Below are positions 1 through 41,822 of a stretch of DNA of 64,000 nucleotides, piece by piece. Position 1 is the first letter of the stretch, and each line of letters begins with the position of its first letter. A model generated the notes under the pieces. That model was not told the origin of the DNA. It ran no database searches and saw nothing but the letters and a program-made list of their open reading frames with translations. The translations under genes and the position numbers were made by a program. Location: the IMG/VR virus record IMGVR_UViG_3300027816_000051, positions 124,001-188,000 of that record. One strand, given 5' to 3'.

Positions 1-1
1 G

Positions 2-367
2 TACCCAGCAAGTGGTACAATTGAGATATGTTCATGTAGTATTCCAAGTGTATTAGGTCCTTATGGTGGGGAGATAACGTATGATGGTGCTTGTGGTGAT
101 TGTTTGTGTACAGACTTTTTTGTTGATATTAATGATTTAACAGCCTCAGATGATAATCAAGTATACTTTGCATACCAATGTTGTGATGGTACATTCACAA
201 CACAAGGTTATAACGCCCCTGGTAATTATAGCGTTTGTCTTATGAGAGTGACAAATGTGTTTATATTGTTTAGAGGAAACTTCGTACCACCAATATATAC
301 TTCGCAATATACATACGGTACTGGTTGTGGTGATTATTGTAACACATTTTGTGGAGAAGCATGTTAA
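2..367 (+). CDS. 5'-truncated Cys-rich putative virion protein (C-terminal part)
   Basis: Frame is open from base 2 (YPASGTIEICSCSIPS...) through the listed 104..367 ORF; carries the YQCCDG module like those in downstream genes. Confidence 0.75.
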   Translation, partial: YPASGTIEICSCSIPSVLGPYGGEITYDGACGDCLCTDFFVDINDLTASDDNQVYFAYQCCDGTFTTQGYNAPGNYSVCLMRVTNVFILFRGNFVPPIYTSQYTYGTGCGDYCNTFCGEAC

Positions 368-411
368 TGATAAAATAATGATTTAAGTATTTATAGAAAG
401 AATAGTAATAA

Positions 412-2976
412 ATGCCAGCACAAATAATAACATTTCAAAATTGTTTAGACCCAGCGTCATACTATGATTTTGTCGTCGATGACAGTTTAGTATTATCGGG
501 TGACACGATTTTTGCTGATTACCAATGTTGGTCTTCAACAGGAAATGTCGGAGGTGGACCGTCAGGTACGGTTATTTTTAGTGGTTATACAACCTGTGAA
601 CAATGTAACGACGATTTTAATGGGTGGCAATTTGAACATTGCCAAATACCAGGGGCATTTGTTTACTTTGGTTTAAAAAATTCAGAAGTTAATCAGTATT
701 TCCAAAGTACAGGTGCAACAATTTCTTATGATGGTACATGTTACAACTATACAGGAGTTTATGAACAAGGCACTGGTAGCACCACTTACAATTATACTGT
801 TGCACAATTAATTTCTGAAAATGCTCTTTTTACAAATTGTATTGACTGTTTAACACCACCAAGTCCAACTCCTACCCCTACTCCAACACCCACACCAACT
901 TTATGTTACTCAGGTATAACCGATTCACCAAATTGGTATTATACGGACTGTTGTGGTGTATATCATAGTGGTTCATTTTCACCAACATATGTTTGTTACG
1001 ACCCGAGTTACCCATATGCAGGGATATCTTTCAATGGTTTCTGTACTGTAGTTTGTCCGAGTGTGACCCCAACTCCAACACCCACATTAACACAAACTCC
1101 TTCCGAAACTCCTTCCGAAACCCCAACCCCAACAAATACTGTAACTCCAACAAAAACTCCAAGTCTAACTCCGACACCTTCGGTTACACCAACAAATACA
1201 CCCACAAATACACCGTCAAGTACGTTAGGTTCGACACCTTCGGTTACACCAACAAATACACCCACAAATACCCCTTCATTAACACCTTCGGTAACTGTTA
1301 GTGTAACACCCACAGTAACCCCATCACCTTCACTAGTACCTACAGGATGTACTCAATATACATTCTCATTACACCCAATTTATTTTTTAACGCAAGCCGG
1401 ACCTTATAATATTTCGGGAACAACAACAGGAGGAACTATAGTATTAATTGCAACTGGTGTGACAACATCTCAATTATTATCTGGGTATACCGCACTTGTG
1501 TGTTATTCAATAACAACATTTACAGTTCAAAGTACTGGTACGTGTACTAATTCTGTGAATTTTACATTACCTGTACCTATTGTATCTCCAACCCCGACCC
1601 CAACAAAAACCCCAACACCAAGTCCATCCGGTAATCCAGTTGCGACCCCAAGTGTAACACCTACTAATACCGTAACCCCGACCCTGACCCCAACACCATC
1701 AGGTGGTTGTAGTGATTCAGTTAGAAATACTCTTGCCGCAACGAATTCATATTCTGCCGTTGGTAGACAAGGTATGGTTTATTCATCATCAAATAACAAA
1801 GCATACGTTCTAAACGCATCAAGTGTTGTACAATCTTTTGTCCCAAATTCAACAAGTTTAACAAATGAATTTACATGGTCAGGAAGTAGTTTATTATTAG
1901 GATATAACTCAACTAACAACAAATTATACAGTTGGGAATCATCATTTCCTGTTAAAATGTTAATAAGAAATTTAAACACAAACACAACATCGTCAATATC
2001 AATTTCGGGAATAACATCAGGTTTAGGAAAAATTGAATATAATTCTGTTTTAAATAAAATTTATGCATTTAGTCAAACAGGTGGAAATTTTTCAGTTTCA
2101 CAAATTAGTGTCATAGATGGTTCAACAGATACTTTTACAAACCAAATTACAGGTATAACTTTATCAAACCCTGAAGCGACTGTTTACAATCCTAATAATA
2201 ATAAATTATATTTCGCTCAGAGTGGTAGAATATATTCTTGTTCTGGTAATACTATTTCGTTAGATGGTACATCACTACCAATCACCTCAGCAAGTTTAAT
2301 TGCTTTGGATGTGACGAACAATATTATTTATTTAGTTAGTGCGTCTACGGTATACAAAATAGATGTTGCAACAAACACCACACTTACTTTAAATTCAATA
2401 TCGGGAGCAACTTGGATTTTTGGCTCAACAAGGTCTATGATATATAATCCTGATAACGGTAAATTATATATTAGCAGATATTCAACATTGTCAGATGGAT
2501 TCTTAGGTGTTCTAGACCCGACAACAGGTATATTTAGTGAAATTATTGGTGACGGTATTTCTAAACCTTTGTATGTACCGACAAATACAATATATGGTAT
2601 AAATGATAATGCTCTATACGAAATTTGTGGTTCATCCTTGGTAGCGGTTTCCCCAACCCCAACCCCTACTTTAACTAAAACCCCAACCCCAACTAAAACT
2701 CCATCAGTTACACCAACACCTAGTCCGACATATCAAGAATGGAATATGGTTGGATGTACAAATTACTGTAGTGGGGTTGTGTTGTGTTCAGGTTCGTATA
2801 GTGTAACATTATACACATTACCAAATGTGGTCAATATTTATGATTCAGGTGTTACCATCTACACGAATAATAACTTAACAACAACATTTGATGGGTTTTT
2901 TCAAATTGGAAGTGTAATTTATGAAGTAGTTTCTGGTTCGGTAACTACTCAGTATACAATTGGTGATGGATGTTAA
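412..2976 (+). CDS. Modular Cys-rich, Pro/Thr-repeat protein with YVTN/YncE-like beta-propeller; putative tail fibre/receptor-binding or decoration protein
   Basis: (TP)n tracts; repeated YN(S/P)xNNK(L/I)Y propeller blades; YYTDCCG module; TATTTAT at 388-394. Confidence 0.7.
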   Translation: MPAQIITFQNCLDPASYYDFVVDDSLVLSGDTIFADYQCWSSTGNVGGGPSGTVIFSGYTTCEQCNDDFNGWQFEHCQIPGAFVYFGLKNSEVNQYFQSTGATISYDGTCYNYTGVYEQGTGSTTYNYTVAQLISENALFTNCIDCLTPPSPTPTPTPTPTPTLCYSGITDSPNWYYTDCCGVYHSGSFSPTYVCYDPSYPYAGISFNGFCTVVCPSVTPTPTPTLTQTPSETPSETPTPTNTVTPTKTPSLTPTPSVTPTNTPTNTPSSTLGSTPSVTPTNTPTNTPSLTPSVTVSVTPTVTPSPSLVPTGCTQYTFSLHPIYFLTQAGPYNISGTTTGGTIVLIATGVTTSQLLSGYTALVCYSITTFTVQSTGTCTNSVNFTLPVPIVSPTPTPTKTPTPSPSGNPVATPSVTPTNTVTPTLTPTPSGGCSDSVRNTLAATNSYSAVGRQGMVYSSSNNKAYVLNASSVVQSFVPNSTSLTNEFTWSGSSLLLGYNSTNNKLYSWESSFPVKMLIRNLNTNTTSSISISGITSGLGKIEYNSVLNKIYAFSQTGGNFSVSQISVIDGSTDTFTNQITGITLSNPEATVYNPNNNKLYFAQSGRIYSCSGNTISLDGTSLPITSASLIALDVTNNIIYLVSASTVYKIDVATNTTLTLNSISGATWIFGSTRSMIYNPDNGKLYISRYSTLSDGFLGVLDPTTGIFSEIIGDGISKPLYVPTNTIYGINDNALYEICGSSLVAVSPTPTPTLTKTPTPTKTPSVTPTPSPTYQEWNMVGCTNYCSGVVLCSGSYSVTLYTLPNVVNIYDSGVTIYTNNNLTTTFDGFFQIGSVIYEVVSGSVTTQYTIGDGC
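1172..1271 (+). repeat. 40-bp exact direct repeat at 60-bp period in a PT tract
   Basis: 1172-1211 equals 1232-1271. Confidence 0.8.
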
Positions 2977-3039: not shown

Positions 3040-3888
3040 ATGGGATTAAATGTTCGTTTATACAATATAATCAATGATGGTACGTACTCAATTAGATACA
3101 AGTCCGGTGATAGCCCGTATCCTGAAACGAACAATTCAACATTTACACTTTACGCAACAGGTTTAACTCTTACAGCTGTTACAATTACAAACTTAAGTTT
3201 TAATACTCAATATTGGGTTAAAATGACAGACGACACTACAGGTCGTTATATAATTAAAAATATTTACACTCACGATAGTAAAGCGTTTCCTTGTTATGAT
3301 ACACTATGTTTTAGTGTTGAGGTACAGTGTGACCCACCAATAAGTCCAACTCCAACACCTACAGTTACAAGAACCCCAACCCCAACACCTACAGTTACAA
3401 AAACACCAACAGTTACCGCTACACCATCTAAGACACCGAACGCTTCAATTACACCAACCCCTACTCCAACAAAAACTCCTGGTTTATCACCAACCCCAAC
3501 AGTTACCAAGACTCCAACTCCTACTCCAACACAAAACACCCCTTCATCATATTGTTTATGGTACAGTATTGAAACGATAGATGAAAATATACAATATGAA
3601 GTTACTTGGACACTAAAAGATAATTTAGGTAGTGTAACAACCGCCACTTCAAATATCCCAATTACTTTTTATAAGGTTAATAGTTCAGGGGTGGTAATTG
3701 CGGTATACACATCACCACAATGGCAAATATTCATTGGTTCATCACAGGATAGTGGAAATATTACACTCAATCCAAGTGCTGGTGAATACTTAGTTGCACA
3801 AACCGGTTTAAGTGGAACCATAACAGACCCTAACTATTGTGGTATTGCATTTATAGATTGTGATTTAAATCCCGATTATTGTAATTAA
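3040..3888 (+). CDS. FN3-like N-domain, Pro/Thr linker and Cys-containing C-domain; putative virion protein
   Basis: [14 protein letters not shown] resembles the FN3 LxPxTxY strand; TPTP tract. Confidence 0.6.
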
Positions 3889-3913: not shown

Positions 3914-4264
3914 ATGCCGTCATTAGTAACATACTCAGTAACAATATCAAATTTTTCAGGACAAACACCTTGTAACGGGTACTATATCTACACAGGGTTA
4001 ACACATAATATTGATGATGCAAATTATATCAATGGGGTTGAAGTTTTAATTCCAATATCAACGGGATATACGTTTAATATAAGTTTATTGGATAACATAC
4101 CACAAATTTTTGTATTTGTGGAACACTGTGACGGACACATAAACCCTGTACCATCATCGGTACCAAAATTGCAAGGTGGTTATCAATTAGCATTAGTTGA
4201 TTTAAGATGTAGTGATTGTTACTACCCATGTGCATTTAATGTTAATGTTGTTCAAATAACGTAA
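3914..4264 (+). CDS. Small Cys-containing beta-rich putative virion protein
   Basis: YYIYTGLT...IFVFVEHCDG resembles the central module of 4268..7189 (CTVYTGLT...IYVRIDCEG). Confidence 0.6.
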   Translation: MPSLVTYSVTISNFSGQTPCNGYYIYTGLTHNIDDANYINGVEVLIPISTGYTFNISLLDNIPQIFVFVEHCDGHINPVPSSVPKLQGGYQLALVDLRCSDCYYPCAFNVNVVQIT

Positions 4265-4267
4265 TAA

Positions 4268-7189
4268 ATGGCTTGTCAATTATATAACGTCACAATAAGT
4301 TCATTGGATACCGGTAATGCCACCGGTAACACTAACCCTGTTAATAATGGTAAGGTGTATGTTGCTTATTACAACTGTAATGGTGTACTTACAACAACAA
4401 GTTTTTCAAATGGTAGTTATACTATTTGTACCGACATACAAAATGGATTACCTAGTTTATATTATTTTAAAAACGATTCTCCATTAACCGCATCGAATAG
4501 TACTGCAAATGATAGTGGTTCACAATGTCAAGAAACCACTTTTTTTGAAAAATGTTGTGAACAAGGAGGCACTATTTATGAAGTACAAAGTGGATTAAAT
4601 TATATAGTAGGTAGTGTATACACTGACAATACGGATTGTTATATTGCGGTTGCGTCGGGCCCTTCAACCGCAACAGTTGACGACACTGGGACGTGGGTTT
4701 CACAACCAAGTTGTACAGCTGGTGAGTGTCCATCATGTCCTTCACCAACCCCGACACCAACTCCAACAGAAACACCCACAGAAACCCCAACTCCAACAGA
4801 AACACCCACAGAAACCCCAACCCCAACACCTTCAGAAACACCCACAGAAACCCCAACCCCAACTCCAACACTTACTAAAACAGTTACACCCACACCAACT
4901 AACACTGTAACACCAACACTATCCCCCACCCCAACACCAACACCATCAATATGTACGGATTGTGTGTGTAAACAAATCATAAGTGAAGATGGAAATACAA
5001 TTACATATTCATATACTGATTGTTATGGTTTGCTTCAAACTTCCGGAACCATCGCACCTTTTGCTACGGTTTATCAATGTGTATGTTTTGACAATCAAAC
5101 AATTACATTCAGTGACCCAACTAATATAGTTGTGAATCCTAATGGTGGTTGTGAGGACTACCAAAATTGTGACTCACTACCGGTCCCAACACCTACATTA
5201 ACTAGTACTCCGACAGTCACACCTACAGTCACTCCTGAACCAACAAGTTCACCAGCTTCAACTGTATCTGTCACACCAACAGTAACACCAACAGTAACAC
5301 CAACAAGTTCGCCGGTTTCAACTGTATCTGTCACACCAACAGTAACTCCTACAAATACAGTTACACCTACAGTCACAACTTCACCTGGCGGTTCACCTAC
5401 ACCAACCAATACATCAACTCCCACAAATACAGTTACACCTACAGTTACTTCATCACCAGGCGATTCACCTACACCCACACCAACTACCTCACCATCAGTA
5501 ACTCCAACCAATACATCAACCCCTACAAATACAGTTACACCTACAGTTACTTCATCACCAGGAGGTTCGCCCACACCAACTACTTCACCATCGGCAACAC
5601 CCTCTAATACACCAAGTGAAACACCTTCAACAACTCCGTCTTTAACACCGACAGTTACACTTACAGTAACATCAACACCGACTCTAACACCTAGCGTTAC
5701 ACCATCAGTTACATCAACACCTGGTGGTTCGCCAACCCCAACACCCACCAACACCCCAACAAAAACCCCTACACCTACTGTTACACCTTCAGGTTGTGTA
5801 AACGATTTGGTCACCCCAAAAGGCGTTAAGATTTCATTTAATTCCGGTTCTAATTATACAAATTGTACGGTCTATACCGGATTAACTTCAACTAACATAA
5901 CAGGTATAACTTCATGTACAAGTATGTCCACAGGAGATATTTGTGATATTACAGGTATAGACCCAACATTAATGGAGATATATGTTAGAATTGATTGTGA
6001 AGGTTGTTGTGAACAAGTTTTTAGAGTTAATTTGGATGATTGTTGTGATAGTTCGTCGACACCGATATCATCACCCACCCCAACAGTAACACCGACTCAG
6101 AGTGCGACTCCTACGAATACACCAACACTTACCCCAACACCAACTGTTAGTAGTACACCATCAACAGGGTATACTTGTAACGATAGCGTTTATGTCCCCT
6201 CGACAGTGAACGGTGTTTCTATAACATCAACATATAGTGGTAGTGTTACCGAAAATACATCTGGATACACGTCATCCTGTGTTGGTGACACTATTGTAAT
6301 GACCGACTATCATAACTTTTTAGGAAATTCAGGACCTTTCTCATATAGATACAATTTTAGTTCACCAGTAAATGATTTAGTTGTTTTTATAACCGGTATG
6401 GGTGGTACTAGTGATGAAGATTTCACATTTACAACAAATACAGGTACCCCCACAATATCTTCACCGTTAAGTTGTTATGTAACAATAACAGGTAACACAA
6501 TTATTGGTGGCTCAACCGCACCACTTTTTGTCAATGGTGGTGGAAAATTCATAATAACAAATTCAACACCATTTATCTCGATGACCATATCAGGTAATGG
6601 TGGTGCCTCAGGTTCTAGGGTGGGTATTTGCTCCGATTCAATCATACCACTTGTAACACCCACACCCACCAATACTTTAACACCAACACCGACCGTAACC
6701 CCAACGAATACTGTAACACCTACTAATACAGTAACTCCAACAATTACAACATCACCCGGTGGTTCGCCCACATCAACACCAACAATAACACCTACTAATA
6801 CAGTTACACCAACTGAAACTGTAACACCAACACCGACCGTAACCCCAACGAATACTGTAACACCTACTAATACAGTTACACCAACTGAAACTGTAACACC
6901 AACACCGACCGTGACTTCTACCAATACAGTAACACCAACAAATACCCCAACACCAACACTCACCCCAACCAGTTCGGCTACTCCATGTGACATACTATGG
7001 GAATTCGATGGAGGAACGACAGGAACAGGAGGTCATACCACATTTAGTTATACTGACTGTACCGGTACCCTTCAATTTATTACTGTTGGGAATGGTACAA
7101 CTGAGACATACTGTGGTTATTTAACACCAACACCTCAAGTTACGAATGATGGTGACGGTACTTTTACAAGCACTGGAACATGTAATTAA
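4268..7189 (+). CDS. 973-aa mucin-like Pro/Thr/Ser-rich protein with several Cys-rich modules; putative virion fibre
   Basis: Four long PT/TVTP tracts separate YYNCNG, YTDCYG, CEGCC and YTDCTG modules. Confidence 0.7.
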   Translation: MACQLYNVTISSLDTGNATGNTNPVNNGKVYVAYYNCNGVLTTTSFSNGSYTICTDIQNGLPSLYYFKNDSPLTASNSTANDSGSQCQETTFFEKCCEQGGTIYEVQSGLNYIVGSVYTDNTDCYIAVASGPSTATVDDTGTWVSQPSCTAGECPSCPSPTPTPTPTETPTETPTPTETPTETPTPTPSETPTETPTPTPTLTKTVTPTPTNTVTPTLSPTPTPTPSICTDCVCKQIISEDGNTITYSYTDCYGLLQTSGTIAPFATVYQCVCFDNQTITFSDPTNIVVNPNGGCEDYQNCDSLPVPTPTLTSTPTVTPTVTPEPTSSPASTVSVTPTVTPTVTPTSSPVSTVSVTPTVTPTNTVTPTVTTSPGGSPTPTNTSTPTNTVTPTVTSSPGDSPTPTPTTSPSVTPTNTSTPTNTVTPTVTSSPGGSPTPTTSPSATPSNTPSETPSTTPSLTPTVTLTVTSTPTLTPSVTPSVTSTPGGSPTPTPTNTPTKTPTPTVTPSGCVNDLVTPKGVKISFNSGSNYTNCTVYTGLTSTNITGITSCTSMSTGDICDITGIDPTLMEIYVRIDCEGCCEQVFRVNLDDCCDSSSTPISSPTPTVTPTQSATPTNTPTLTPTPTVSSTPSTGYTCNDSVYVPSTVNGVSITSTYSGSVTENTSGYTSSCVGDTIVMTDYHNFLGNSGPFSYRYNFSSPVNDLVVFITGMGGTSDEDFTFTTNTGTPTISSPLSCYVTITGNTIIGGSTAPLFVNGGGKFIITNSTPFISMTISGNGGASGSRVGICSDSIIPLVTPTPTNTLTPTPTVTPTNTVTPTNTVTPTITTSPGGSPTSTPTITPTNTVTPTETVTPTPTVTPTNTVTPTNTVTPTETVTPTPTVTSTNTVTPTNTPTPTLTPTSSATPCDILWEFDGGTTGTGGHTTFSYTDCTGTLQFITVGNGTTETYCGYLTPTPQVTNDGDGTFTSTGTCN
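4761..4820 (+). repeat. Exact 30-bp tandem duplication in a PT tract
   Basis: CTCCAACAGAAACACCCACAGAAACCCCAA x2. Confidence 0.85.
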
Positions 7190-10153: not shown

Positions 10154-10195
10154 ATGCGGTTTGGTTTTACAATTTTTATTTTGTATATTTTATCT

Positions 10196-17261: not shown

Positions 17262-17283
17262 TTATTATTAATATTTATATCAT

Positions 17284-18031: not shown

Positions 18032-18040
18032 TTTATTTGA

Positions 18041-18502: not shown

Positions 18503-18546
18503 TTTTTTTTACATATTTTTACCCATGAACCACAAACCGAACATTC

Positions 18547-29703: not shown

Positions 29704-29714
29704 CCCCCTTTTTT
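29690..29714. terminator. Bidirectional intrinsic terminator between convergent operons
   Basis: AAGGGGGT-CAATA-ACCCCCTT with an A run before and a T run after. Confidence 0.8.
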
Positions 29715-33581: not shown

Positions 33582-33583
33582 TA

Positions 33584-34285: not shown

Positions 34286-35012
34286 AAGGTGTTAAATTTT
34301 TGTTGATATAAACCACATCCATTTCTGTGTTTGAAGATTCTGGCGACTCGTCTATTGGTATAAACCTATTTAGTTTTTCATCTAGTTCAGATTTACTTGT
34401 AGAACCACGATATAATTCCTGTAACCCTACTTCGGTGGTTATTATTTTTACATCATTTAAATATTCTTTTAGAGAGTCTAATACGATATTTTCTGCACCT
34501 TGAACATCCATCCAAATCAAATCAACACTTTTAATATCATTTTCTTTTAACCAATCACTAAGAACAATACAGTCAACCTCAGTTTCCTTTTGGGCCCACT
34601 GAGATGAACGCCAGTGGTTTGTTGTCTGTAATAAAGAACTGGCACCCACATTTCCATTATAAACTTCGTAAAATTTAGTTTTACCGTTGTAATTGTTTAT
34701 TGCGTATTGGTAAACTTTTATGTTATTAATTTTCTCAACGTTCTTAACTGTAAATTCGTAGTTTTCTTTTACTGGTTCAAACGCATATATTTTAGCATGT
34801 GGAAACCATCTATTTAACTCTAAACTTTGGCAACCATCTCTTGACCCAATATCTAATATTGTGTTGACATCATTAAAGTCAATTTTATCTTTTATAACAT
34901 TAATCATTTTTGTTGTCCATAATGGACATCTACCATTCAAATCGGTAAAGGCACCCCTATTTAATTCATCTTGAGTAAATGCGTCGTCAATAAATTTTGA
35001 ATTATCTATCAT
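34278..35012 (-). CDS. FkbM-family methyltransferase
   Basis: LDIGSRDG, YAFEP, WMDVQGAE. Confidence 0.85.
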   Translation of the reverse strand: MIDNSKFIDDAFTQDELNRGAFTDLNGRCPLWTTKMINVIKDKIDFNDVNTILDIGSRDGCQSLELNRWFPHAKIYAFEPVKENYEFTVKNVEKINNIKVYQYAINNYNGKTKFYEVYNGNVGASSLLQTTNHWRSSQWAQKETEVDCIVLSDWLKENDIKSVDLIWMDVQGAENIVLDSLKEYLNDVKIITTEVGLQELYRGSTSKSELDEKLNRFIPIDESPESSNTEMDVVYINKNLTPYG

Positions 35013-35023
35013 TTTTATAATTT

Positions 35024-35614
35024 TTAAATCACCACCATACTATAACATGGTGCGTCTTTATATGTGGACAAATTAATATTTCGTTTTAACCAAAAAATTT
35101 CATTATCATTACTTAATTCGCCACCCATAAAGTTTATATTTTTATAGTTAAGTGATATTATATTTTCCGTGATTATTTTTTCCGAATACTCATCGTGTAT
35201 GGTAGATACATTCCAAATATCAAACACCGTATCTATTTCACCCTCCACAAAATAATCAACAAAATATTTTCCTTCATTATGCCAAGTCAAAAAATTTACA
35301 CACTCTTTTTTAAATGTGGAAACTAATCTATTTGCATTAGATGGTAGTAAATCACTTCTCCATTTAAGGACTCTGTTGTAACCTATTTCTTTGGCTTTCA
35401 TTATTCCATTCAAAGTTGATATTTTTTGTAGTGCTATATTTTGTACACCCCTATCGTGTGGAATACTGTTGAATAAGACAACATCATTAGTATCGTATTT
35501 TGATTCTTCACCTTGCCATGTTGACCAAATCAAATCATAACCAGTCCAAGCGTTTTTTAATTCTTTAACGTAGTCTGAAGGTCCTTGTACTATGACACAA
35601 AAATCATTATTCAT
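35024..35614 (-). CDS. WavE-like glycan biosynthesis protein
   Basis: VIVQGP, QKISTLNG, LKWRSD pattern. Confidence 0.45.
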   Translation of the reverse strand: MNNDFCVIVQGPSDYVKELKNAWTGYDLIWSTWQGEESKYDTNDVVLFNSIPHDRGVQNIALQKISTLNGIMKAKEIGYNRVLKWRSDLLPSNANRLVSTFKKECVNFLTWHNEGKYFVDYFVEGEIDTVFDIWNVSTIHDEYSEKIITENIISLNYKNINFMGGELSNDNEIFWLKRNINLSTYKDAPCYSMVVI

Positions 35615-35620
35615 ACTGAA

Positions 35621-36340
35621 TTAAAATTTTGATATGTGATTATGATATTGTGACCCTTCATACATGTATGGTCTAGTTATTTTATTATGTATGAATACAT
35701 CTAATGCGGAACCAAAATCAATATAAGTGTTATTACTATTATTTGTAAACATATGTTTTATGATAACAGCAGATGTTGGTCCACAACATACGATAAATAA
35801 AGTATCTTTATATTTTGAAGAAACATTGTATATTTTTTCTAAAAACGAATCTCTATGTTCTTCCCAATAGTTTACACAATCATTAGGGAACGGTACAAAT
35901 TCTGATACACTAAATGGTATGTTTTTTAAATCACAATTTTCATTACAAATTAAAACAACATCTCGATTTATATTTCTTATTCTTGATATATTTTCTTTGT
36001 AATTTGCGTTAATCCATAGGTTAGCAAATGTAATGTTTGATTTATTTTGTATTCTATCATATAAAAAATTATAGTCTCTAATACTATCAGTTTTGGAGGA
36101 TATTGCAAAATAAAAATTTGGGTCGTTCAACCCTATACATTCATTTAAATCCACACCTAATTTGGTTTGTCCCCCACTCGAAAACCATTTATCGTTTTGA
36201 TACGCTTGTGTATTCTTTTCTATCGGTGAATTATTCATTAACATCACTTCACCATCGGCATATCTAACAAAAGAAAAGTTAGTTCGACTATCTATCTTTT
36301 CCCAAAACGAATTAAAATCTTCAATATACTTTTCAATCAT
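35621..36340 (-). CDS. GT-D fold (DUF1792-like) glycosyltransferase
   Basis: FSFVRYADGE, CCGPTSAVI, YIDFGSALD correspond to the DUF1792 RFGDGE, GPTA and DIG motifs. Confidence 0.6.
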   Translation of the reverse strand: MIEKYIEDFNSFWEKIDSRTNFSFVRYADGEVMLMNNSPIEKNTQAYQNDKWFSSGGQTKLGVDLNECIGLNDPNFYFAISSKTDSIRDYNFLYDRIQNKSNITFANLWINANYKENISRIRNINRDVVLICNENCDLKNIPFSVSEFVPFPNDCVNYWEEHRDSFLEKIYNVSSKYKDTLFIVCCGPTSAVIIKHMFTNNSNNTYIDFGSALDVFIHNKITRPYMYEGSQYHNHISKF

Positions 36341-37061
36341 TTAATATTGTCTTAAATCCTTTATTTACATACCCACGGTAAACTTCACCCATTAAATTCA
36401 TATTTGAATGATTTACGGAAATTGCGTTGGAATCAGTTCCATGTTCCCATGCATATTCTGGTATACTACCCCACATTTCTCTATTTTCTTTAGGATGGGG
36501 AGGAACGTAAGTTCCGATATTTGCGTATTTCTGTAATGTATATGAAAAGTGCATATCCTCACCAACTAATTTACTCTGATTGATTTCAGGTAATTCTCTC
36601 CAAAATATCGATAACCATTCTCTTTTAAAGAACCACGAGTGACCAACAATGTCGACCTTTTCAATTTCTTCGTTAGGTTGGTCCCAACCGACTCTTGTTG
36701 CTGGCCAATAAGAGTTTTTTGTGTGAAATTTTACACCGATAGTTCCTAATAAACCTTCTTGAATTTTCATGGTGTTTAGACAGTTTTCTAACCATAGTTT
36801 ACCCGGTATTGTGTCATCATCAAAAACACAAATATATTCTGTGTTGGCATTTAAAGCAAATGCAAATCTTGCCCACACACCTAAATTACTATTACAAGAT
36901 GCGTGAATTAAATCTTTGGTTAGTCCCTCATCAAATTGAGAACCAGAATTTTGCCAAAATAAAATTGATTCGGGTTGGACACTTTGATTTCTAATTGATT
37001 CCAATTGTTTTTGGAGAACATGTGGTCTTTTATACCCATTTAATATTACCGTTATACTCAT
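36333..37061 (-). CDS. GT2 glycosyltransferase
   Basis: VILNGYKR, CVFDDD, GEDMHFS. Confidence 0.75.
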   Translation of the reverse strand: MSITVILNGYKRPHVLQKQLESIRNQSVQPESILFWQNSGSQFDEGLTKDLIHASCNSNLGVWARFAFALNANTEYICVFDDDTIPGKLWLENCLNTMKIQEGLLGTIGVKFHTKNSYWPATRVGWDQPNEEIEKVDIVGHSWFFKREWLSIFWRELPEINQSKLVGEDMHFSYTLQKYANIGTYVPPHPKENREMWGSIPEYAWEHGTDSNAISVNHSNMNLMGEVYRGYVNKGFKTILND

Positions 37062-38050
37062 ACAATTTTTCTAAATATTTCAATGATTCTTTCACAAGAA
37101 TTACCATCACCAAAAGGACAATCATATTCTGTTTGGAAATCGTTAATAATATCGTAAAAAATACCTTCTAAGTCAATGGGTTTTTTACATATAAAAGACG
37201 TTTTACCCAAGGACTCAGGTCTCTCAGTTTTTTCTCTACATACAATAACTTTCTTATTTAGGAACGACGCCTCTTCTTGAACACCCCCACTATCTGAAAT
37301 TAGTAATTTACAGGATTTGAATTCCTCAATAAATTTATCATGGGTTAATGGTTCAATAACATCAACATGTGTCAATATATGTTTGTGTTTTATGACGTTT
37401 GGGTTTGGGTGTATTGGAAGAATGAATTTTAATTCAGGATTATTCTTTGCTAATCGATTGATAACATCAAACCACTCCGACATCATCTCATGATTCTCTC
37501 TTCTATGTAAAGTGATTAAGACTTTATTTTCGTATGTAATATTTTCTTTATTAAGATTATCTAATACGGTATTGCCAACTACAAAATTTTTACCCTGAAC
37601 TTTTTCATTTTCTAAGTTCATCTTGTTACTTTCTGTTGGGCAAAGATTATAGTTTGAAATTCTACTAATTAACTGCCGATACATTTCTTCGGGGTAAGGG
37701 TGATTGTAGTCATATGTCCGTAATCCCGCTTCTAAATGAATCACTTCTTTTTTATGGTGTAATCCTATTAGGGATAATGAAAGAGCGGTTGCGGTGTCCC
37801 CTTGGATAAGTATATGTGTAACCCCTTCCAAAAATTCTTTTTTAAAATTTAAAAATACGGATGACATAATACTATCCAATCTATTTTCACACGTATCATC
37901 AATGGATAATTTATAATCAAAATCACCCAATACAATATCTTTGTGTTGGGTAACATATAAAATTTTATGGGGAATACTTTCCCCACACATTTCTATTAAT
38001 TTTTTTATTTTAATATACTCAGGTCTTGTGCCGTAACAAAATAATATCAT
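37058..38050 (-). CDS. wecB: UDP-N-acetylglucosamine 2-epimerase (non-hydrolysing)
   Basis: GTRPE, QGDTATA, HLEAGLR, PEE, GNTVLD, TLHRREN, DSGGVQEEA, ERPE, FGDG. Confidence 0.92.
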   Translation of the reverse strand: MILFCYGTRPEYIKIKKLIEMCGESIPHKILYVTQHKDIVLGDFDYKLSIDDTCENRLDSIMSSVFLNFKKEFLEGVTHILIQGDTATALSLSLIGLHHKKEVIHLEAGLRTYDYNHPYPEEMYRQLISRISNYNLCPTESNKMNLENEKVQGKNFVVGNTVLDNLNKENITYENKVLITLHRRENHEMMSEWFDVINRLAKNNPELKFILPIHPNPNVIKHKHILTHVDVIEPLTHDKFIEEFKSCKLLISDSGGVQEEASFLNKKVIVCREKTERPESLGKTSFICKKPIDLEGIFYDIINDFQTEYDCPFGDGNSCERIIEIFRKIV

Positions 38051-38868
38051 ATATAAGTTGAAATGATTTCTAAATTTTTTAAAGTGTTAGTTTCTAAGAA
38101 ATCAATTAATTCATCACCTGATAACCTATTAAACCATTCTTCTAAACTTGCACCATAATTTTGTGTCGTTATTACTTCCAAACCTAAACATTTTGCCTCA
38201 ACAACCAGTCTACAAAAAGTTTCTCTTGCTATCGGGAAAAACACAATACCTTTACATTTGGCCATATTACTTAAAAATTCAACTCTGTCTTTAGATTCTT
38301 TAAGAATATGGACCGGTAATTTATTTTCAGAACAATACTTCAGACTACCTTGGGTGTTCTTTATCCAATTATTTGTATAGTAAACAGAATATTTGTCGTT
38401 TTTAACATTGTTGGATTTATTTAAATTCCTCAATAATTCTAAGTCCTCATTTGACCATATCGAACTATTCAGATTTATAAAATTAGCAACAACATCGTTT
38501 TTAAGATAAACGTTCATGTGGTCGGTTGTTTGAACAAATACCGCTTTTGCATTCCGGTAAAGAGAATAGTTGGTTCTTTCCTCAATCGGAATTATGTTGT
38601 CGGTATATCTCCATGGGTGTCTACTTGCACATATTTTATAATCGTTTTCAATAATGACGTAGTTCAAATTTTGTATTTGATTAACCAAGTTTGGGTTCAT
38701 CAAAGAAATATTTGATATAATATACAGGGCGTTGTAATCAAATGACTTGACTTGGTTTGAATATTCAAACTCAAGATTAAATCTATCAATTAAAACTTGA
38801 TTCACCCATTCAGAACCACCGTGAGGTACTTCTTTAATGGTAAAATCCGATATAAGTATTTTCCTCAT
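38047..38868 (-). CDS. GT-B (GT4-like) glycosyltransferase
   Basis: GGSE; PIARETFCRLVVEAKCLG matches the E-x7-E motif. Confidence 0.65.
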   Translation of the reverse strand: MRKILISDFTIKEVPHGGSEWVNQVLIDRFNLEFEYSNQVKSFDYNALYIISNISLMNPNLVNQIQNLNYVIIENDYKICASRHPWRYTDNIIPIEERTNYSLYRNAKAVFVQTTDHMNVYLKNDVVANFINLNSSIWSNEDLELLRNLNKSNNVKNDKYSVYYTNNWIKNTQGSLKYCSENKLPVHILKESKDRVEFLSNMAKCKGIVFFPIARETFCRLVVEAKCLGLEVITTQNYGASLEEWFNRLSGDELIDFLETNTLKNLEIISTYI

Positions 38869-39587
38869 ATAACTTGATAATTTTCTTTTAACATGCTGTC
38901 CATGTAATTGAATGGTAAATTAAAATAATGTTCACCGAATTTATGTTGTTTATTGAACGATGACAATCTCTTTGCTCTTGAAATGTAAATGTTCTTCACG
39001 TAGTCTTTACCCAAGAATTTATAGTGAAGAAGTTTTATTTCCCGCTCATCCGAAAATTTACCATCAACAGAATTAAAACTGTGACCACCAATGCCGTATT
39101 TTATATCTAAATCAGGATGAAAAATTATATTTTTACACATTGGTTCATACGTTTGTGAACCTGTTTTAATTTTTGTTGTAATGAATTCACCGTCGTATAT
39201 TGGAAATTCAGTACTAACCATGTCGTGACCGTCTATTCTTGGGACGGTTATACCCATTTCTTTGTACTCTTGAAGTTTATCCATAAGATTTTCATGGTAT
39301 ATAAACTCATCACAGTCACAAACTATAACCCAATCAACACCCTGACCTCTACTTCTTTTTTTATACTCTTCGGATTTAATGTTTACGTAATTAATTTCAT
39401 TTATTTCATTACCACTATCCCATTTAATAACCTCAACTTTTGGGTACCTCTTATAAATCTCATCAGAGGAGTCCGTTGACATATTATCGTATATGAATAT
39501 TTTTTCACAGATTGTACTATAGTAATCCAATGTGAATGGTAATATTTTTTCTTCATTCCATGACAGTATATGTGCGTGTATCTTCAT
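38865..39587 (-). CDS. GT2-like glycosyltransferase
   Basis: WNEE, DNMSTDSS, IVCDCDE, LLHY. Confidence 0.75.
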   Translation of the reverse strand: MKIHAHILSWNEEKILPFTLDYYSTICEKIFIYDNMSTDSSDEIYKRYPKVEVIKWDSGNEINEINYVNIKSEEYKKRSRGQGVDWVIVCDCDEFIYHENLMDKLQEYKEMGITVPRIDGHDMVSTEFPIYDGEFITTKIKTGSQTYEPMCKNIIFHPDLDIKYGIGGHSFNSVDGKFSDEREIKLLHYKFLGKDYVKNIYISRAKRLSSFNKQHKFGEHYFNLPFNYMDSMLKENYQVI

Positions 39588-39588
39588 T

Positions 39589-40368
39589 TTAAAATATGTT
39601 TTTCCAAAGTGTTAATATCTCTTCGTTACTTAATTTAGAAACTTCATTCATAGTCTCTTCATTACCATAAAACTCTGTACCGGTTAAATAACATTCATCT
39701 TTAACCAAACAAGCAACCTCACCCTTTGATGAGTGATATACCTTACCAATCATATCGTACATTTCTTGTTTATTGGTGGTGTGACCGTAATGAATTACTC
39801 TTGGATTCATTAAAGGTTTTACCAATTTGTCAAAATAGTTTTGGTCACCGATGTGACCGAACAAATAGATTTTTTCACACCTGTCTTTTAATGCTCTTTG
39901 TATTGACACATGGGTCTGTTTTCTGTCTTCAATTGTACCAATAATTCCTGCAATATTTCTTACCAGCTCTTTATTTGAAATAATTAAATTTTCTTTGATG
40001 TTTGGTATTATTACATAATCACCCCTGTAATCCGAGTGATATTTTCGATGCTCTTCATGTAAAAACACGCACAGGTCCCAATACTGTTTAATTTTACCAA
40101 CAGGGAACCACCATTTTTCATGACAAGACAAAATAACTTTTTTAACAGGTGGTCTTTCCTGTAGTTGTAAAAAATGGGTAATTACAATATCATCAGATTC
40201 ATACTTTAAATCTTTTTCAATGTTCCCTGATTTACATTTGTCTAAATGGTAATTCTGATTACCGTAAAATGTGCAATCAATACCATTTTCATTTAAGAAA
40301 TTTGTTAAGTTTATAAAAAAAGTGGTAGAACCACCTTTTTCTGTAAATCCCGATACAATTTTTATCAT
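39589..40368 (-). CDS. GT-B-like glycosyltransferase
   Basis: GGSTTFFINL, SCHE, KGEVACLVKDEC (E-x7-E variant). Confidence 0.55.
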   Translation of the reverse strand: MIKIVSGFTEKGGSTTFFINLTNFLNENGIDCTFYGNQNYHLDKCKSGNIEKDLKYESDDIVITHFLQLQERPPVKKVILSCHEKWWFPVGKIKQYWDLCVFLHEEHRKYHSDYRGDYVIIPNIKENLIISNKELVRNIAGIIGTIEDRKQTHVSIQRALKDRCEKIYLFGHIGDQNYFDKLVKPLMNPRVIHYGHTTNKQEMYDMIGKVYHSSKGEVACLVKDECYLTGTEFYGNEETMNEVSKLSNEEILTLWKNIF

Positions 40369-41822
40369 CTTAATTGTTTGATATTTTTTCTAATTTCAGG
40401 TGAGTTTATGTACTGACCTAAGACTTGTTTTAATTCAACATCAACCTTTTCAAATTTTGATGCCATATCAATCATTACCACACTGTTTGTGTCAATGAAT
40501 GTTTTACGTTTTTTAAGTAAAGTTTTCAACGCAAAATCTAAGTTATAAATTGATGTTTCTAAATTAATATCAAACCAATCAATCATTTTTAAATTTGTAG
40601 ATGTAGTGGCAAAAAAGTCACTAATACTACCAAAATTGTTTGGAAAGTGTCCGTGTAAAATATTGAAAAAAGATGATTTGTTTTTAAAAATTAAATTGAA
40701 CTGTTCGTTGTTTTGAACTATATCCAATCCATTTGAAAAAATTGTTCGGTCGTTTTCTAATACTGTAGGAAAGACGCACCCAAAAGTATTTTTTTCACTC
40801 TTAAATATTGAATACATACTTGAGAAAACGTCGTTCAATACGGTAACAGTATCATTACTGAAAAATAACAAATCTGTTTTTGATTCCATAAACGATTCAT
40901 CCCATTTCAGTACTGATAAGTTTTTATTTAATGTATCAAAAAAACCCTCGTAAATTTTAATATTTTCAGATTCAAATTCTCTAATATTGTCTATATTGGT
41001 ATCCGTCGAGATGAGTGAAATCTGTAAACTATCAAACACTGGTAATTTTTTTATGTTTTCAAAAAACTGAATTAAATTTTCATTATCGTTTGATGTTTGA
41101 ACTATTAAATTAAATTTATCTTTAAACTGTTTTGGTTTGGTTATGTCATAATCAATTTTTGGTGTTATATTAATTGGTAGGTTCTCTTTAAATTTTTCAA
41201 TGTAAAATTCCCTATTCTTTTCCCAAGAATCATTGGTCATTCCGATTGATTTGTGAGTGATTCTTATGTTGTATATAACACCGATGTTTACCTCACTTAA
41301 GTGATTGCTAGTACAGAATACCATATCATAAAAATGAAAACCCGGTACTGACTCATCAAAAGTGTGTTTTATTCTGTTTTTGTGGATTCCAATGAATAAA
41401 CCATCCACTAAACAAACTTCGTGAATTGAATTTGGGATTCCATTTGCATATCTCGATTCCCATTTTTTACCCTCATTTTCATGATTAACAATACCAACCA
41501 TTTTGGTATTATCTGTCCACCACCTACCACTCTCATGAATATTGGTTGTACCGGCAACACCGAGAATCCCGTAGTCAGATTCTTCAAAATGTTTGACTAA
41601 TTTTCTACCCCACGAAGTCGTATTAAAGTAAATGTCATCATGACAAAGTACGACAATATCATGAATCGACTCTTGAATAATTTCATTGTAAGTTTGTGAA
41701 AGACTTTTTTCACCATTGTTTACTTTTTCAATAACTTGAACTTTGGGGTGTCCACAAGTTTTTTTTAAATATTCTTGAAATTTTGGGTTGGACTCTCTTG
41801 TACTGTAACCTATTGTAATCAT
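40365..41822 (-). CDS. Two-domain GT2-like glycosyltransferase
   Basis: YN...LCHDD, GVAG, VDGLF, GFHFYD; second, degenerate GT-A-like domain. Confidence 0.7.
   Translation of the reverse strand: MITIGYSTRESNPKFQEYLKKTCGHPKVQVIEKVNNGEKSLSQTYNEIIQESIHDIVVLCHDDIYFNTTSWGRKLVKHFEESDYGILGVAGTTNIHESGRWWTDNTKMVGIVNHENEGKKWESRYANGIPNSIHEVCLVDGLFIGIHKNRIKHTFDESVPGFHFYDMVFCTSNHLSEVNIGVIYNIRITHKSIGMTNDSWEKNREFYIEKFKENLPINITPKIDYDITKPKQFKDKFNLIVQTSNDNENLIQFFENIKKLPVFDSLQISLISTDTNIDNIREFESENIKIYEGFFDTLNKNLSVLKWDESFMESKTDLLFFSNDTVTVLNDVFSSMYSIFKSEKNTFGCVFPTVLENDRTIFSNGLDIVQNNEQFNLIFKNKSSFFNILHGHFPNNFGSISDFFATTSTNLKMIDWFDINLETSIYNLDFALKTLLKKRKTFIDTNSVVMIDMASKFEKVDVELKQVLGQYINSPEIRKNIKQLR

What the first reader, a model, noticed from the sequence alone, without database searches (positions are those of the whole stretch)
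1..41822. Candidate virion O-glycosylation system: mucin-like structural proteins plus a soluble glycosyltransferase operon
Seen: at least three late-type genes (412, 3040, 4268) carry hundreds of Thr/Ser residues in Pro/Thr tracts that resemble mucin or cellulase O-glycosylated linkers. The same genome has a 15-gene operon of GTs, sugar O-methyltransferases and nucleotide-sugar epimerases in which I see no TM protein, flippase or polymerase. Established: Pro/Thr/Ser-rich tracts are classical O-glycosylation acceptors; chloroviruses and some mycobacteriophages glycosylate capsid or tail proteins with their own GTs. Inference: the operon builds a methylated glycan on these tracts in the cytoplasm, giving the virion a glycan coat for stiffened fibres, protease shielding or adhesion. 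I am not aware of this being described for Bacteroidota phages.
Basis: partly seen in the sequence, partly recalled or inferred. Interest (0 to 1): 0.85.

Follow-up and report, generated by a model that had tools for sequence, protein, structure and literature searches.

The report
Mucin-like phage tail fibres, sugar operon
A freshwater jumbo phage encodes tail-fibre-type proteins made largely of threonine/proline tracts (one about 5,470 residues long) and a 15-gene set of soluble sugar-adding enzymes; the enzymes may coat the fibres with sugars, which is plausible but untested.

Summary
ORFs 412, 3040 and 4268 carry Pro/Thr/Ser tracts. Window 1-367 is the tail of a fourth, roughly 5,472-aa ORF with about 4,700 residues of strict (Thr-X)n. 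These genes lie directly downstream of gp25-like and gp6-like baseplate wedge genes, so they are very probably tail-fibre proteins.

The minus-strand block 29713-41822 has 15 ORFs and no transmembrane segment. It includes at least six glycosyltransferase (GT)-like proteins, one with a confirmed GT-D fold, two FkbM methyltransferases, a WecB-type 2-epimerase and an SDR sugar enzyme.

The cluster's first two to four genes are conserved across hundreds of uncultured phage contigs, while the other genes vary. In a second, diverse lineage, PT-rich fibre ORFs lie 5-10 kb from the homologous GT cluster in 45 of 47 loci.

The glycosylation link remains an inference. Here the two gene sets lie 22 kb apart on opposite strands. 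A cultured Flavobacterium phage has an unrelated sugar operon but no PT tracts in the 104 kb scanned. The acceptor could also be another virion protein, host glycans or DNA.

Verdict: partly supported. It is a new variant of phage and giant-virus virion glycosylation.

The parts
1..367 (+). C-terminal end (last ~121 codons plus stop) of a giant PT fibre ORF of about 5,472 aa. The ORF starts about 16 kb upstream of the window. Its layout is a 52-aa N-terminal domain, a ~4,700-aa (Thr-X)n tract, then three Cys-rich modules separated by PT linkers.
412..2976 (+). 854-aa PT protein. It has Cys-rich modules, PT linkers (264 tract residues) and a ~300-aa repeat-containing globular region (residues 442-737). 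A TATTTATA motif lies 24 nt upstream.
3040..3888 (+). 282-aa PT protein. The N-terminal domain (MGLNV(R/K)(I/L)YNI...) is conserved in relatives, followed by an 89-residue PT tract and a C-terminal module.
3914..4264 (+). 116-aa Cys-containing protein kept at constant length (116 aa) between the PT genes in the close relatives (L004, L008, L009, L018), with homologues in more distant ones. It has no PT tract.
4268..7189 (+). 973-aa PT protein with five globular modules and 501 PT-tract residues. Its length is hypervariable in relatives (405-1,303 aa at this position in the closer relatives L008, L009 and L018).
7227..9377 (+). 716-aa conserved protein that closes the fibre module. It is 52-100% identical in 19 viral loci and has no known family. 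A TATTTATA motif lies 16 nt upstream.
40365..41822 (-). First operon gene, 485 aa. The model shows two tandem GT-A domains. The N-domain (PF13712) has an invariant H-D-D motif. The C-domain has no conserved DxD. This gene belongs to the conserved core of the cluster.
39589..40368 (-). 259-aa core protein with no assignable family. It is the most conserved member of the cluster (41-82% identity in relatives).
38865..39587 (-). 240-aa GT2-type glycosyltransferase (PF13704), a core member.
38047..38868 (-). 273-aa core protein with only a weak GT1 (GT-B C-terminal half) match.
37058..38050 (-). 330-aa WecB-type non-hydrolysing UDP-GlcNAc 2-epimerase (Pfam 204 bits; NCBIfam 209.9 bits against a cut-off of 210.15).
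36333..37061 (-). 242-aa GT2 glycosyltransferase.
35621..36340 (-). 239-aa GT-D-fold glycosyltransferase with a conserved R..DGE motif.
35024..35614 (-). 196-aa protein with no assignable family.
34278..35012 (-). 244-aa FkbM-family methyltransferase (PF05050).
32149..34285 (-). Three ORFs (233, 224 and 253 aa) with no assignable family. They are present in some relatives and absent in others.
31385..32182 (-). 265-aa GT2 glycosyltransferase. The true start is probably the ATG 10 codons downstream of the listed TTG.
30771..31388 (-). 205-aa FkbM-family methyltransferase.
29713..30774 (-). 353-aa NAD-dependent sugar epimerase/reductase (SDR). Its best, sub-threshold match is to GDP-fucose synthase. 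This is the last gene of the operon.
29690..29710 (-). Intrinsic-terminator-like hairpin with a T run, directly after the last operon gene.
41872..42334 (-). Leader region of the cluster, holding four features. (1) A 61-aa ORF at 42149-42334. (2) A TATTTATA motif 17 nt upstream of it, starting at 42357. (3) A hairpin with a T run at 42145-42115. (4) A ~66-aa ORF at 41872-42072 that looks like a small ribbon-helix-helix regulator; this is a reading of the sequence by eye, not a tool result.

Best explanation
The window comes from an uncultured freshwater jumbo myovirus-like phage. It is probably of, or near, the 'moraphage' lineage, and its host is probably a member of the Flavobacteriia.

The tail-fibre module ends in a set of 'beads on a string' proteins. 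Small Cys-rich globular modules are joined by Pro/Thr tracts. One fibre protein has about 4,700 residues of strict (Thr-X)n.

Proposed mechanism (inferred, not shown):
1. During infection, a soluble cytoplasmic pathway makes activated sugars (UDP-ManNAc via the WecB homologue, and a second sugar via the SDR enzyme).
2. The conserved core of the cluster (the 485-aa two-domain GT-A enzyme plus the 259-, 240- and 273-aa proteins) starts O-linked glycans on Thr/Ser of the newly made fibre proteins.
3. The variable enzymes (GT2s, the GT-D enzyme, two FkbM methyltransferases) extend and methylate those glycans.
4. This happens before virion assembly and without any lipid carrier or export step.
5. 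The result would be stiff, extended, protease-resistant, mucin-like fibres whose glycan differs between related phages.

Shown here: the gene content, the absence of membrane components, the fibre-module position, the GT-D fold, the conservation pattern and the neighbourhood in relatives.

Inferred: that glycans are made, that the PT tracts are the acceptor, and what the coat does.
For: 1. Fibre assignment.
- In the same phage (288-kb contig) the gene order on one strand is: gp25-like and gp6-like baseplate wedge genes; then 1374-, 586-, 277-, 388-, 305- and 1414-aa genes; then the giant PT ORF; then 412, 3040, 3914, 4268 and 7227.
- The cultured Flavobacterium phage immuto has the same baseplate-then-fibre/spike order.

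2. PT tracts are a lineage-wide fibre feature.
- They occur downstream of the 388-aa gene in most of the related loci that extend past the next fibre gene.
- Many contigs end inside the tracts.

3. The operon is soluble.
- None of the 15 ORFs has a TM segment.
- The PT proteins have no signal peptide, so any modification must be cytoplasmic.

4. GT-D fold.
- The family profile hits DUF1792 structures 4PFX/4PHR at E 7.6e-5, including the DGE motif.
- The model (pLDDT 97.7) has 4PHR/4PFX as its only significant PDB matches.
- DUF1792 acts in the cytoplasmic O-glycosylation of the serine-rich repeat adhesin Fap1 (PMC5063993, PMC5207161).

5. Conserved core, variable periphery.
- The GT485 family has 2,729 homologues of constant length.
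- The core genes recur, while the remaining genes are swapped for fucosyltransferase-like GT10/GT11, acetyltransferase, KAS III and other genes in relatives.

6. Neighbourhood.
- In a second lineage (31 clusters at 90% identity, 8 at 75%), 45 of 47 loci with enough upstream sequence carry PT-rich ORFs 5-10 kb from the GT cluster.
- There are none in 629 kb downstream of the GT gene.
- In at least six of these loci the PT-rich ORF region holds a domain 38-47% identical to the N-terminal domain of the giant protein.
- The same neighbourhood is seen in L232 and L244.

7. Weak evidence: a TATTTAT(A/T/C) motif lies 12-34 nt upstream of baseplate and PT genes and of the small ORF that leads the GT strand.

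8. The ThyA homologue is an equivalog-level thymidylate synthase (305 bits against a cut-off of 108). The window therefore shows no hydroxymethyl-base route for DNA glycosylation.
Against: - No expression, proteomic or glycan data exist; everything comes from sequence.
- In this genome the operon is 22.5 kb from the fibre genes, on the other strand. No GT homologue lies inside any of 99 baseplate/fibre loci of this lineage.
- No initiating peptide O-GT (GtfA/B-like or ppGalNAc-T-like) was identified. The structural similarity of GT485 to GalNAc-T2, LH3 and COLGALT1 is generic GT-A similarity.
- In relatives the cluster follows dUTPase and other metabolic genes on the same strand, which does not look like a late structural unit.
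- The neighbourhood in lineage 2 may reflect one ancestral module arrangement.
- Flavobacterium phage immuto has an unrelated 13-gene soluble sugar operon but no PT tract in the 104 kb scanned. Sugar operons in flavophages therefore do not need PT acceptors.
- PT linkers are not always glycosylated (own knowledge).
- The promoter-motif statistics are weak: 8 of 48 upstream regions, against 4 in the reverse-complement control.
Confidence: 0.45

Rival explanations
1. The cluster glycosylates other virion proteins (capsid, decoration, sheath or tube), as in mycobacteriophages. The PT tracts are plain, unglycosylated flexible spacers between fibre modules.
For: - Known phage virion glycosylation targets capsid and tail-tube C-termini, as summarised in PMC12619734.
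- The operon is not next to the fibre genes here or in any fibre locus of this lineage.
- Phage immuto has a sugar operon without PT tracts in the 104 kb scanned.
Against: - The PT tracts offer about 2,900 Ser/Thr hydroxyls per set of fibres and sit in the same cytoplasm as the enzymes.
- The GT cluster and PT fibre genes are neighbours in 45 of 47 loci of a second lineage.
- A 4,700-residue unglycosylated (Thr-X)n chain would be a compact coil with no obvious use (inference).
Confidence: 0.2
2. The cluster remodels host envelope glycans (LPS, capsule or surface glycoproteins) during infection, for example to block superinfection or to keep progeny from sticking to debris. It would use the host's lipid carrier, initiating transferase and exporters.
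For: - The enzyme types (GT2, WecB, SDR, FkbM) are typical of O-antigen and capsule clusters.
- The variable gene content resembles serotype variation.
- PMC12619734 lists serotype conversion as one role of phage GTs.
Against: - None of the 15 genes encodes a membrane protein, initiating phosphoglycosyl transferase, flippase, polymerase or ABC exporter.
- The core is conserved in hundreds of large, apparently lytic phage contigs.
- Serotype conversion is known mainly from temperate phages (own knowledge).
Confidence: 0.12
3. The cluster hypermodifies phage DNA with sugars to evade restriction.
For: - Phage GTs are best known for DNA glucosylation, and diverse glycans on 5hmC DNA have been reported (10.1101/2023.12.21.572611; PMC13326640).
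- A DNA methyltransferase gene lies divergently next to the cluster.
- dUTPase precedes the cluster in relatives.
Against: - The ThyA homologue is an ordinary thymidylate synthase.
- The adjacent methyltransferase is an N6/N4 type and a Dam-type methyltransferase is also present. No C5-methyltransferase or TET-like enzyme was seen in the window.
- Six or more GTs plus two sugar methyltransferases exceed known DNA glycan pathways (own knowledge).
- Only 64 kb of a genome of at least 288 kb was examined, so this is not excluded.
Confidence: 0.08

Closest known systems
Mycobacteriophage virion glycosylation (Che8, Corndog, Myrna; Freeman et al. 2023, as cited in PMC12619734)
   Same: Phage-encoded soluble glycosyltransferases are thought to add O-linked glycans to virion proteins in the cytoplasm.
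   Different: - There the acceptors are short C-terminal extensions of capsid and tail-tube subunits.
- Here the candidates are fibre proteins with hundreds to thousands of Thr.
- The 485-aa GT and the GT-D protein have no detectable homologue in any of 50,697 deposited phage genomes.
- The host phylum differs.
- Nothing has been shown experimentally here.
Serine-rich repeat adhesin glycosylation in Gram-positive bacteria (Fap1/GspB; GtfA/B, Gtf3, the DUF1792 GT-D enzyme; PMC5063993, PMC5207161, PMC6973325)
   Same: - A very long Ser/Thr-rich repeat protein is built up stepwise by several soluble cytoplasmic GTs, including a GT-D-fold enzyme, without a lipid carrier.
- The product is a fibrillar surface adhesin.
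   Different: - The repeats here are Thr-Pro/Asn/Val, not Ser-rich.
- No GtfA/GtfB pair was recognised.
- There is no accessory Sec system; release would be by lysis as part of a virion.
- The relation to DUF1792 is at fold and profile level only (13-14% identity).
Giant-virus fibril glycosylation (Mimivirus and relatives; chlorovirus capsid glycans; PMC9614988, PMC5408694)
   Same: - The virus encodes its own nucleotide-sugar enzymes, many soluble GTs and sugar methyltransferases.
- The clusters vary between related viruses.
- The glycans decorate external fibrils or the capsid.
   Different: - Those viruses have eukaryotic hosts and unrelated acceptor proteins.
- The only link here is generic GT-A fold similarity to giant-virus GTs.
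Pro/Thr linkers of bacterial cellulases and mucin domains of animals (own knowledge)
   Same: Extended Pro/Thr/Ser tracts join globular modules and are classical O-glycosylation sites.
   Different: - Those proteins are secreted and glycosylated outside the cytoplasm or in the Golgi.
- These proteins have no signal peptide.
- The strict (Thr-X)n alternation over about 4,700 residues has no parallel that I know of.
Glycosyltransferase orthogroups of 'moraphages' (PMC12619734)
   Same: - These are large freshwater phages with predicted Bacteroidota hosts.
- They carry glutamine synthetase, a sigma factor, gp6/gp25 baseplate genes and four core GT orthogroups.
- The authors list DNA, host serotype and virion glycosylation as possible roles.
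   Different: - That paper does not mention Pro/Thr-rich proteins (no occurrence of 'threonine' or 'proline') and assigns no acceptor.
- Membership of this window in that lineage was not tested phylogenetically.

Membership tests
Phage-encoded virion protein glycosylation (mycobacteriophage type) | Phage genome encodes soluble glycosyltransferases | tested here: met
   At least six GT-like ORFs, none with a TM segment.
Phage-encoded virion protein glycosylation (mycobacteriophage type) | Glycans demonstrably attached to virion proteins | not testable with these tools
   This needs virions and mass spectrometry.
Phage-encoded virion protein glycosylation (mycobacteriophage type) | Homology of the GTs to those of known glycosylated phages | tested here: not met
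   tblastn of the 485-aa GT and the GT-D protein against 50,697 phage records gave no match at E 1e-3. The tool itself worked, as one search shows.
Serine-rich repeat protein (SRRP) cytoplasmic O-glycosylation | Long Ser/Thr-rich repeat acceptor protein | tested here: met
   About 5,900 tract residues with 2,882 Ser/Thr across four proteins. The repeats are Thr-rich, not Ser-rich.
Serine-rich repeat protein (SRRP) cytoplasmic O-glycosylation | GT-D (DUF1792) elongating enzyme | tested here: met
   Profile hit to 4PFX/4PHR at E 7.6e-5, including the DGE motif. These two entries are the only significant fold matches, with TM 0.55-0.57. Pfam and NCBIfam hits are below their cut-offs.
Serine-rich repeat protein (SRRP) cytoplasmic O-glycosylation | GtfA/GtfB initiating pair (GT4, GT-B fold) | tested here: inconclusive
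   There is only a weak GT1 match in the 273-aa ORF, and the 259-aa core ORF has no family. In a relative the first GT is fused to a GT4 N-terminal domain.
Serine-rich repeat protein (SRRP) cytoplasmic O-glycosylation | Accessory Sec (SecA2/SecY2) export genes | tested here: not met
   No such genes occur in the operon or beside the fibre genes, and no membrane proteins occur in the operon.
Lipid-carrier-dependent polysaccharide cluster (Wzx/Wzy or ABC type) | Initiating phosphoglycosyl transferase, flippase, polymerase or exporter | tested here: not met
   The highest 19-residue hydropathy in the 15 ORFs is 1.51, and there are no such Pfam families.
DNA base glycosylation (T4-like or 5hmC-glycan systems) | Pathway to a hydroxymethylated or hydroxylated base | tested here: not met
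   The only ThyA homologue in the window scores as a thymidylate synthase equivalog. The methyltransferases are N6/N4 and Dam types. The rest of the genome was not examined.
T4-like contractile-tail baseplate/fibre module | gp25-like and gp6-like wedge genes followed by peripheral baseplate and fibre genes on one strand | tested here: met
   phrog_261/43 and phrog_6/219 hits, then nine large genes ending in the PT genes. The order is the same in phage immuto. The PT genes themselves match no fibre family.
Moraphage lineage (PMC12619734) | Marker genes and phylogenetic placement (TerL, MCP, PolB) | not tested
   The shared gene types (glutamine synthetase, sigma factor, SbcCD-like exonuclease, primase, GT core) fit. 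The marker genes lie outside the window.

The most novel reading that the evidence does not exclude
A widespread group of freshwater jumbo phages carries micrometre-scale, mucin-like glycoprotein tentacles. A single ~5,500-residue fibre protein, with Thr at every second position over ~4,700 residues, would be turned into a stiff bottle-brush. The brush would be built in the host cytoplasm by a conserved, lipid-carrier-independent O-glycosylation core. Its glycan would be diversified between phages by swapping tailoring enzymes. Fully extended, the chain would span roughly 1.2-1.6 µm, several times the virion's size. That would greatly enlarge the capture radius for hosts or particles.
Probability: 0.25. 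Interest if true: 0.85.

Novelty: new variant of a known kind. Interest (0 to 1): 0.62.

Why it matters
If the link holds, it would be the first virion glycosylation system proposed for phages of Bacteroidota. It would also be the first phage case in which the acceptors are mucin-like tracts rather than short tails on capsid proteins.

It would give a function to a GT core conserved in hundreds of uncultured large phage contigs. A recent survey left the role of such core GTs in large freshwater phages open.

It would also explain why these phages invest in a roughly 16-kb gene made almost entirely of Thr-X repeats.

A glycan-coated fibre several times longer than the virion would change how adsorption of large aquatic phages is modelled.

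There is also a practical point. The PT genes break metagenome assemblies in this lineage, so fibre genes are systematically missing or truncated in its published genomes.

Tried and rejected
- Cultured relatives: megablast of 23 kb and tblastn of the 716-, 1414- and 305-aa proteins, the 485-aa GT and the GT-D protein against 50,697 phage genomes all gave no match.
- Families for the PT and neighbouring fibre proteins: Pfam found nothing. PHROGs found only phrog_15511 (unknown function), over the low-complexity tract. The PDB sequence search found nothing for the 716- and 1414-aa proteins. The ESM Atlas gave only sub-threshold fibre and baseplate leads.
- Families for five operon ORFs: Pfam up to E 5, NCBIfam and PDB phmmer all found nothing usable.
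- Cross-matching contig names between fibre-module hits and GT-cluster hits, to test co-occurrence on single contigs: only contigs of the same phage overlapped. Each search keeps the best 80 loci and single-protein queries reach only close relatives.
- GT485 as a bifunctional glycan polymerase like K4CP, PmHS2 or LARGE1: the fold matches two-GT-A enzymes, but the C-domain has no conserved DxD, so I do not adopt this reading.
- DNA glycosylation: considered and ranked low, but not excluded.
- tRNA genes that might support Thr/Pro demand: none in the window.
- Generic sigma-70 promoter scan: no better than shuffles.
- Minus-strand ORFs inside the PT genes (1008-1313, 3294-3647, 4639-4980, 5158-5814, 6475-6993): where translated, they are the Gly/Val-rich antisense reading of the PT repeats, so I take all of them for artefacts and not genes.


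Full report
**What the window is**

The 64-kb window (about 31% G+C) is part of a large uncultured phage.
- Identical copies lie on IMG/VR contigs of up to 288 kb from several freshwater samples. Relatives of 52-96% protein identity lie on contigs of up to 335 kb.
- The window encodes RuvC-like, primase, SbcCD-like, ClpP, sigma-70-type, Dam, N6/N4 methyltransferase, glutamine-synthetase-like and thymidylate-synthase genes.
- There is no nucleotide match to any deposited phage.
- The best cultured matches are to Flavobacterium phage vB_FspM_immuto: 54% for the unusual 441-aa ThyA and 26% for the gp6-like wedge protein.
- The gene set fits the recently described 'moraphages'. These are large freshwater phages with predicted Bacteroidota hosts, glutamine synthetases and four core glycosyltransferase orthogroups (PMC12619734).
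- I did not test membership of that lineage phylogenetically.

ORFs 412-2976, 3040-3888 and 4268-7189 have P+T+S fractions of 0.38-0.51, against 0.24 or less for every other ORF. They have no signal peptide or hydrophobic segment. PT tracts (264, 89 and 501 residues) alternate with Cys-rich globular modules.

Window 1-367 is the end of an ORF that begins about 16 kb upstream.
- Joined from overlapping loci, and consistent with contig coordinates, the ORF is 16,419 nt, or about 5,472 aa. It is 45% Thr, 20% Pro, 14.5% Asn and 8.6% Val.
- In a 4,720-residue stretch, Thr occupies every second position (2,222 TxT against one TT). X is Pro, Asn or Val in 93% of cases.
- The underlying DNA repeats are only 65-80% alike and all four Thr codons are used. 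The composition is therefore maintained by selection on the protein.
- Independent assemblies differ by about 253 nt in this region, and many related contigs end inside it.
- Together the four proteins offer about 2,900 Ser/Thr in tracts.

**Are these virion proteins?**

No family search recognises them, but their position is informative.
- In the same phage the order on one strand is as follows. First come a gp25-like and a gp6-like baseplate wedge gene. Six large genes follow (1374, 586, 277, 388, 305 and 1414 aa). Next is the giant PT ORF. The three PT ORFs with the 116-aa ORF between them come after that. The conserved 716-aa ORF closes the module, and replication genes begin after it.
- Phage immuto has the same baseplate-then-fibre/spike order in its deposited annotation.
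- In 80 related loci, PT tracts recur at this position wherever the sequence reaches far enough. They sometimes lie inside the 1414-aa homologue itself. Lengths are hypervariable, but the N-terminal domains are conserved.
- One 51%-identity relative instead has a collagen-like (G-T/S-S)n fibre.

I conclude that the PT genes are the distal fibre part of the baseplate module. This rests on synteny, not on proteomics.

**The operon**

Fifteen tightly packed minus-strand ORFs (29713-41822) end at a strong terminator. Two small ORFs and a hairpin precede them.
- Pfam gives three GT2-type proteins, one GT2_5, two FkbM methyltransferases, a UDP-GlcNAc 2-epimerase and an SDR sugar enzyme. NCBIfam places the epimerase at the WecB cut-off and finds nothing specific for the SDR enzyme.
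- None of the 15 has a transmembrane segment. There is no initiating phosphoglycosyl transferase, flippase, polymerase or exporter.
- The 239-aa ORF belongs to a family with 675 representative clusters. Its profile hits the DUF1792 structures 4PFX/4PHR, including the DGE motif. Its model (pLDDT 97.7) has those two entries as its only significant fold matches. It is therefore a GT-D-fold enzyme. The founding member of that fold extends the O-glycan of the serine-rich adhesin Fap1 in the cytoplasm (PMC5063993).
- The first gene (485 aa) models confidently (pLDDT 92.8) as two tandem GT-A domains. It resembles two-GT-A enzymes (K4CP, PmHS2, LH3, LARGE1, COLGALT1) and, for the N-domain, GalNAc-T2. 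Only the N-domain keeps an invariant H-D-D motif, so I treat the C-domain as accessory.
- Five ORFs remain without a family.

**Conservation pattern**

- The 485-aa GT has 2,729 homologues of constant length on contigs of up to 366 kb. More than 527 IMG/VR stretches encode a relative.
- In relatives the first two to four genes recur at 41-82% identity.
- The other genes come and go. They are replaced by GT10/GT11 fucosyltransferase-like genes, an acetyltransferase, KAS III, other methyltransferases and a WavE-like gene.
- A fixed core with a changeable periphery is what one expects of a pathway that makes an exposed, diversifying glycan. That reading is an inference.

**Evidence bearing on the link**

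For the link:
- Both sets are cytoplasmic. The enzyme set needs no lipid carrier. A GT-D enzyme is present.
- In a second, diverse lineage, 45 loci fall into 31 clusters at 90% identity and 8 at 75%. There the homologous GT, fused to a GT4 domain in L178, heads a similar cluster. PT-rich fibre-like ORFs lie 5-10 kb upstream on the opposite strand in 45 of 47 loci that reach that far. There are none in 629 kb downstream.
- In at least six of those loci the PT-rich ORF region holds a domain 38-47% identical to the N-terminal domain of the giant protein.
- L232 and L244 show the same neighbourhood.
- A TATTTAT(A/T/C) motif lies 12-34 nt before the start codons of baseplate and PT genes, and of the small ORF that leads the GT strand. 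Its statistics are weak.

Against the link:
- In this genome the two sets are 22.5 kb apart on opposite strands.
- No GT homologue lies in any of 99 fibre loci of this lineage.
- In relatives the cluster follows dUTPase and other metabolic genes on the same strand.
- The lineage-2 neighbourhood could be one inherited arrangement.
- Phage immuto carries an unrelated 13-gene soluble sugar operon but no PT tract in the 104 kb I scanned.
- I could not cross-match fibre and GT markers on single distant contigs, because each search keeps only the best 80 loci.

**Rivals**

- Other virion proteins as acceptors (0.20). This fits the known mycobacteriophage cases and the immuto observation.
- Host envelope remodelling (0.12). 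This fits the enzyme types but not the complete absence of membrane components.
- DNA glycosylation (0.08). This is disfavoured by the ordinary thymidylate synthase and by the size and methyltransferase content of the cluster. Three quarters of the genome is outside the window, so it is not excluded.
- Best explanation (0.45): cytoplasmic O-glycosylation of the PT fibre tracts by the conserved core, with variable elongation and methylation.

**Comparison with what is known, and novelty**

Virion glycosylation by virus-encoded enzymes is established in mycobacteriophages and giant viruses. Cytoplasmic stepwise O-glycosylation of very long Ser/Thr repeats is established for Gram-positive SRRP adhesins.

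The candidate system would work like the SRRP pathway but end in a virion fibre. It shares a GT-D-fold enzyme with that pathway. It lacks a recognisable GtfA/B pair and any export system. The 485-aa GT and the GT-D protein, the two operon enzymes searched, have no detectable homologue in deposited phage genomes.

The moraphage paper noted core GTs and listed virion glycosylation as one of three possibilities. It did not mention the PT proteins.

I rate this a new variant of a known kind. The giant (Thr-X)n fibre gene is the most striking concrete finding, and the glycosylation link is plausible but untested.

Noticed in passing
window 1-367, continuing upstream (L061:6828 onward; L044:2-11977): Giant ORF of about 5,472 aa with Thr at every second position over ~4,700 residues. 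Related metagenome contigs often end inside it. Its length differs by ~253 nt between samples.
   Followed up: yes
window 1008-1313, 3294-3647, 4639-4980, 5158-5814, 6475-6993 (minus strand): ORFs listed on the minus strand inside the PT genes. The ones whose translation was seen are the Gly/Val-rich antisense reading of the PT repeats, so all five are almost certainly not genes.
   Followed up: partly
window 388, 3006, 3900, 7211, 17271, 22745, 57091, 58746, 63277(-), 42357(-); L084 upstream of 943, 3282, 11192: TATTTAT(A/T/C) motif 12-34 nt upstream of start codons of baseplate, fibre and some other genes. It may be a late-promoter element, but the statistics are weak.
   Followed up: partly
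window 41872-42334 (minus strand): Two small ORFs lead the GT strand. One is 61 aa and starts MGCGCKK, followed by a hairpin terminator. The other is ~66 aa and looks by eye like a ribbon-helix-helix regulator.
   Followed up: no
window 47317-48642: Thymidylate synthase of 441 aa, with large insertions relative to the family model. Full-length 54%-identity homologues occur in the Flavobacterium immuto phages.
   Followed up: partly
window 44255-45379: Glutamine-synthetase-like gene, a feature noted for moraphages.
   Followed up: no
window 10154-11134: The listed primase ORF starts with a hydrophobic 14-residue extension that relatives lack. The true start is probably the second Met, near 10196.
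   Followed up: no
L138:16528-21125: In a 51%-identity relative, the fibre gene after the 1476-aa protein is a collagen-like (G-T/S-S)n protein (30% Ser, 16% Thr) instead of a PT protein.
   Followed up: partly
L217 (MW353176.1:49128-59944): The cultured Flavobacterium phage immuto has a 13-gene block of soluble sugar enzymes (GTs, aminotransferases, a methyltransferase, an epimerase and a 'pilin glycosylation protein'). It is unrelated in sequence to the window's operon. No PT tracts were found in the 104 kb scanned.
   Followed up: partly
L178:677-4606 (minus strand): 1,309-aa PT-rich protein next to the GT cluster in a second phage lineage (321-kb contig). Read by eye, its globular regions on either side of the PT tracts look like lectin-type (LamG-like) domains.
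   Followed up: no
window 16587-19359: ClpP protease and a sigma-70-family factor with regions 2 and 4 are encoded close together, with three small ORFs between them, two of which have hydrophobic segments.
   Followed up: no
window 49068-50444 and 61615-62466: Two ORFs have lipoprotein-like signal peptides ending in Cys. One matches phrog_200 'lipoprotein'.
   Followed up: no
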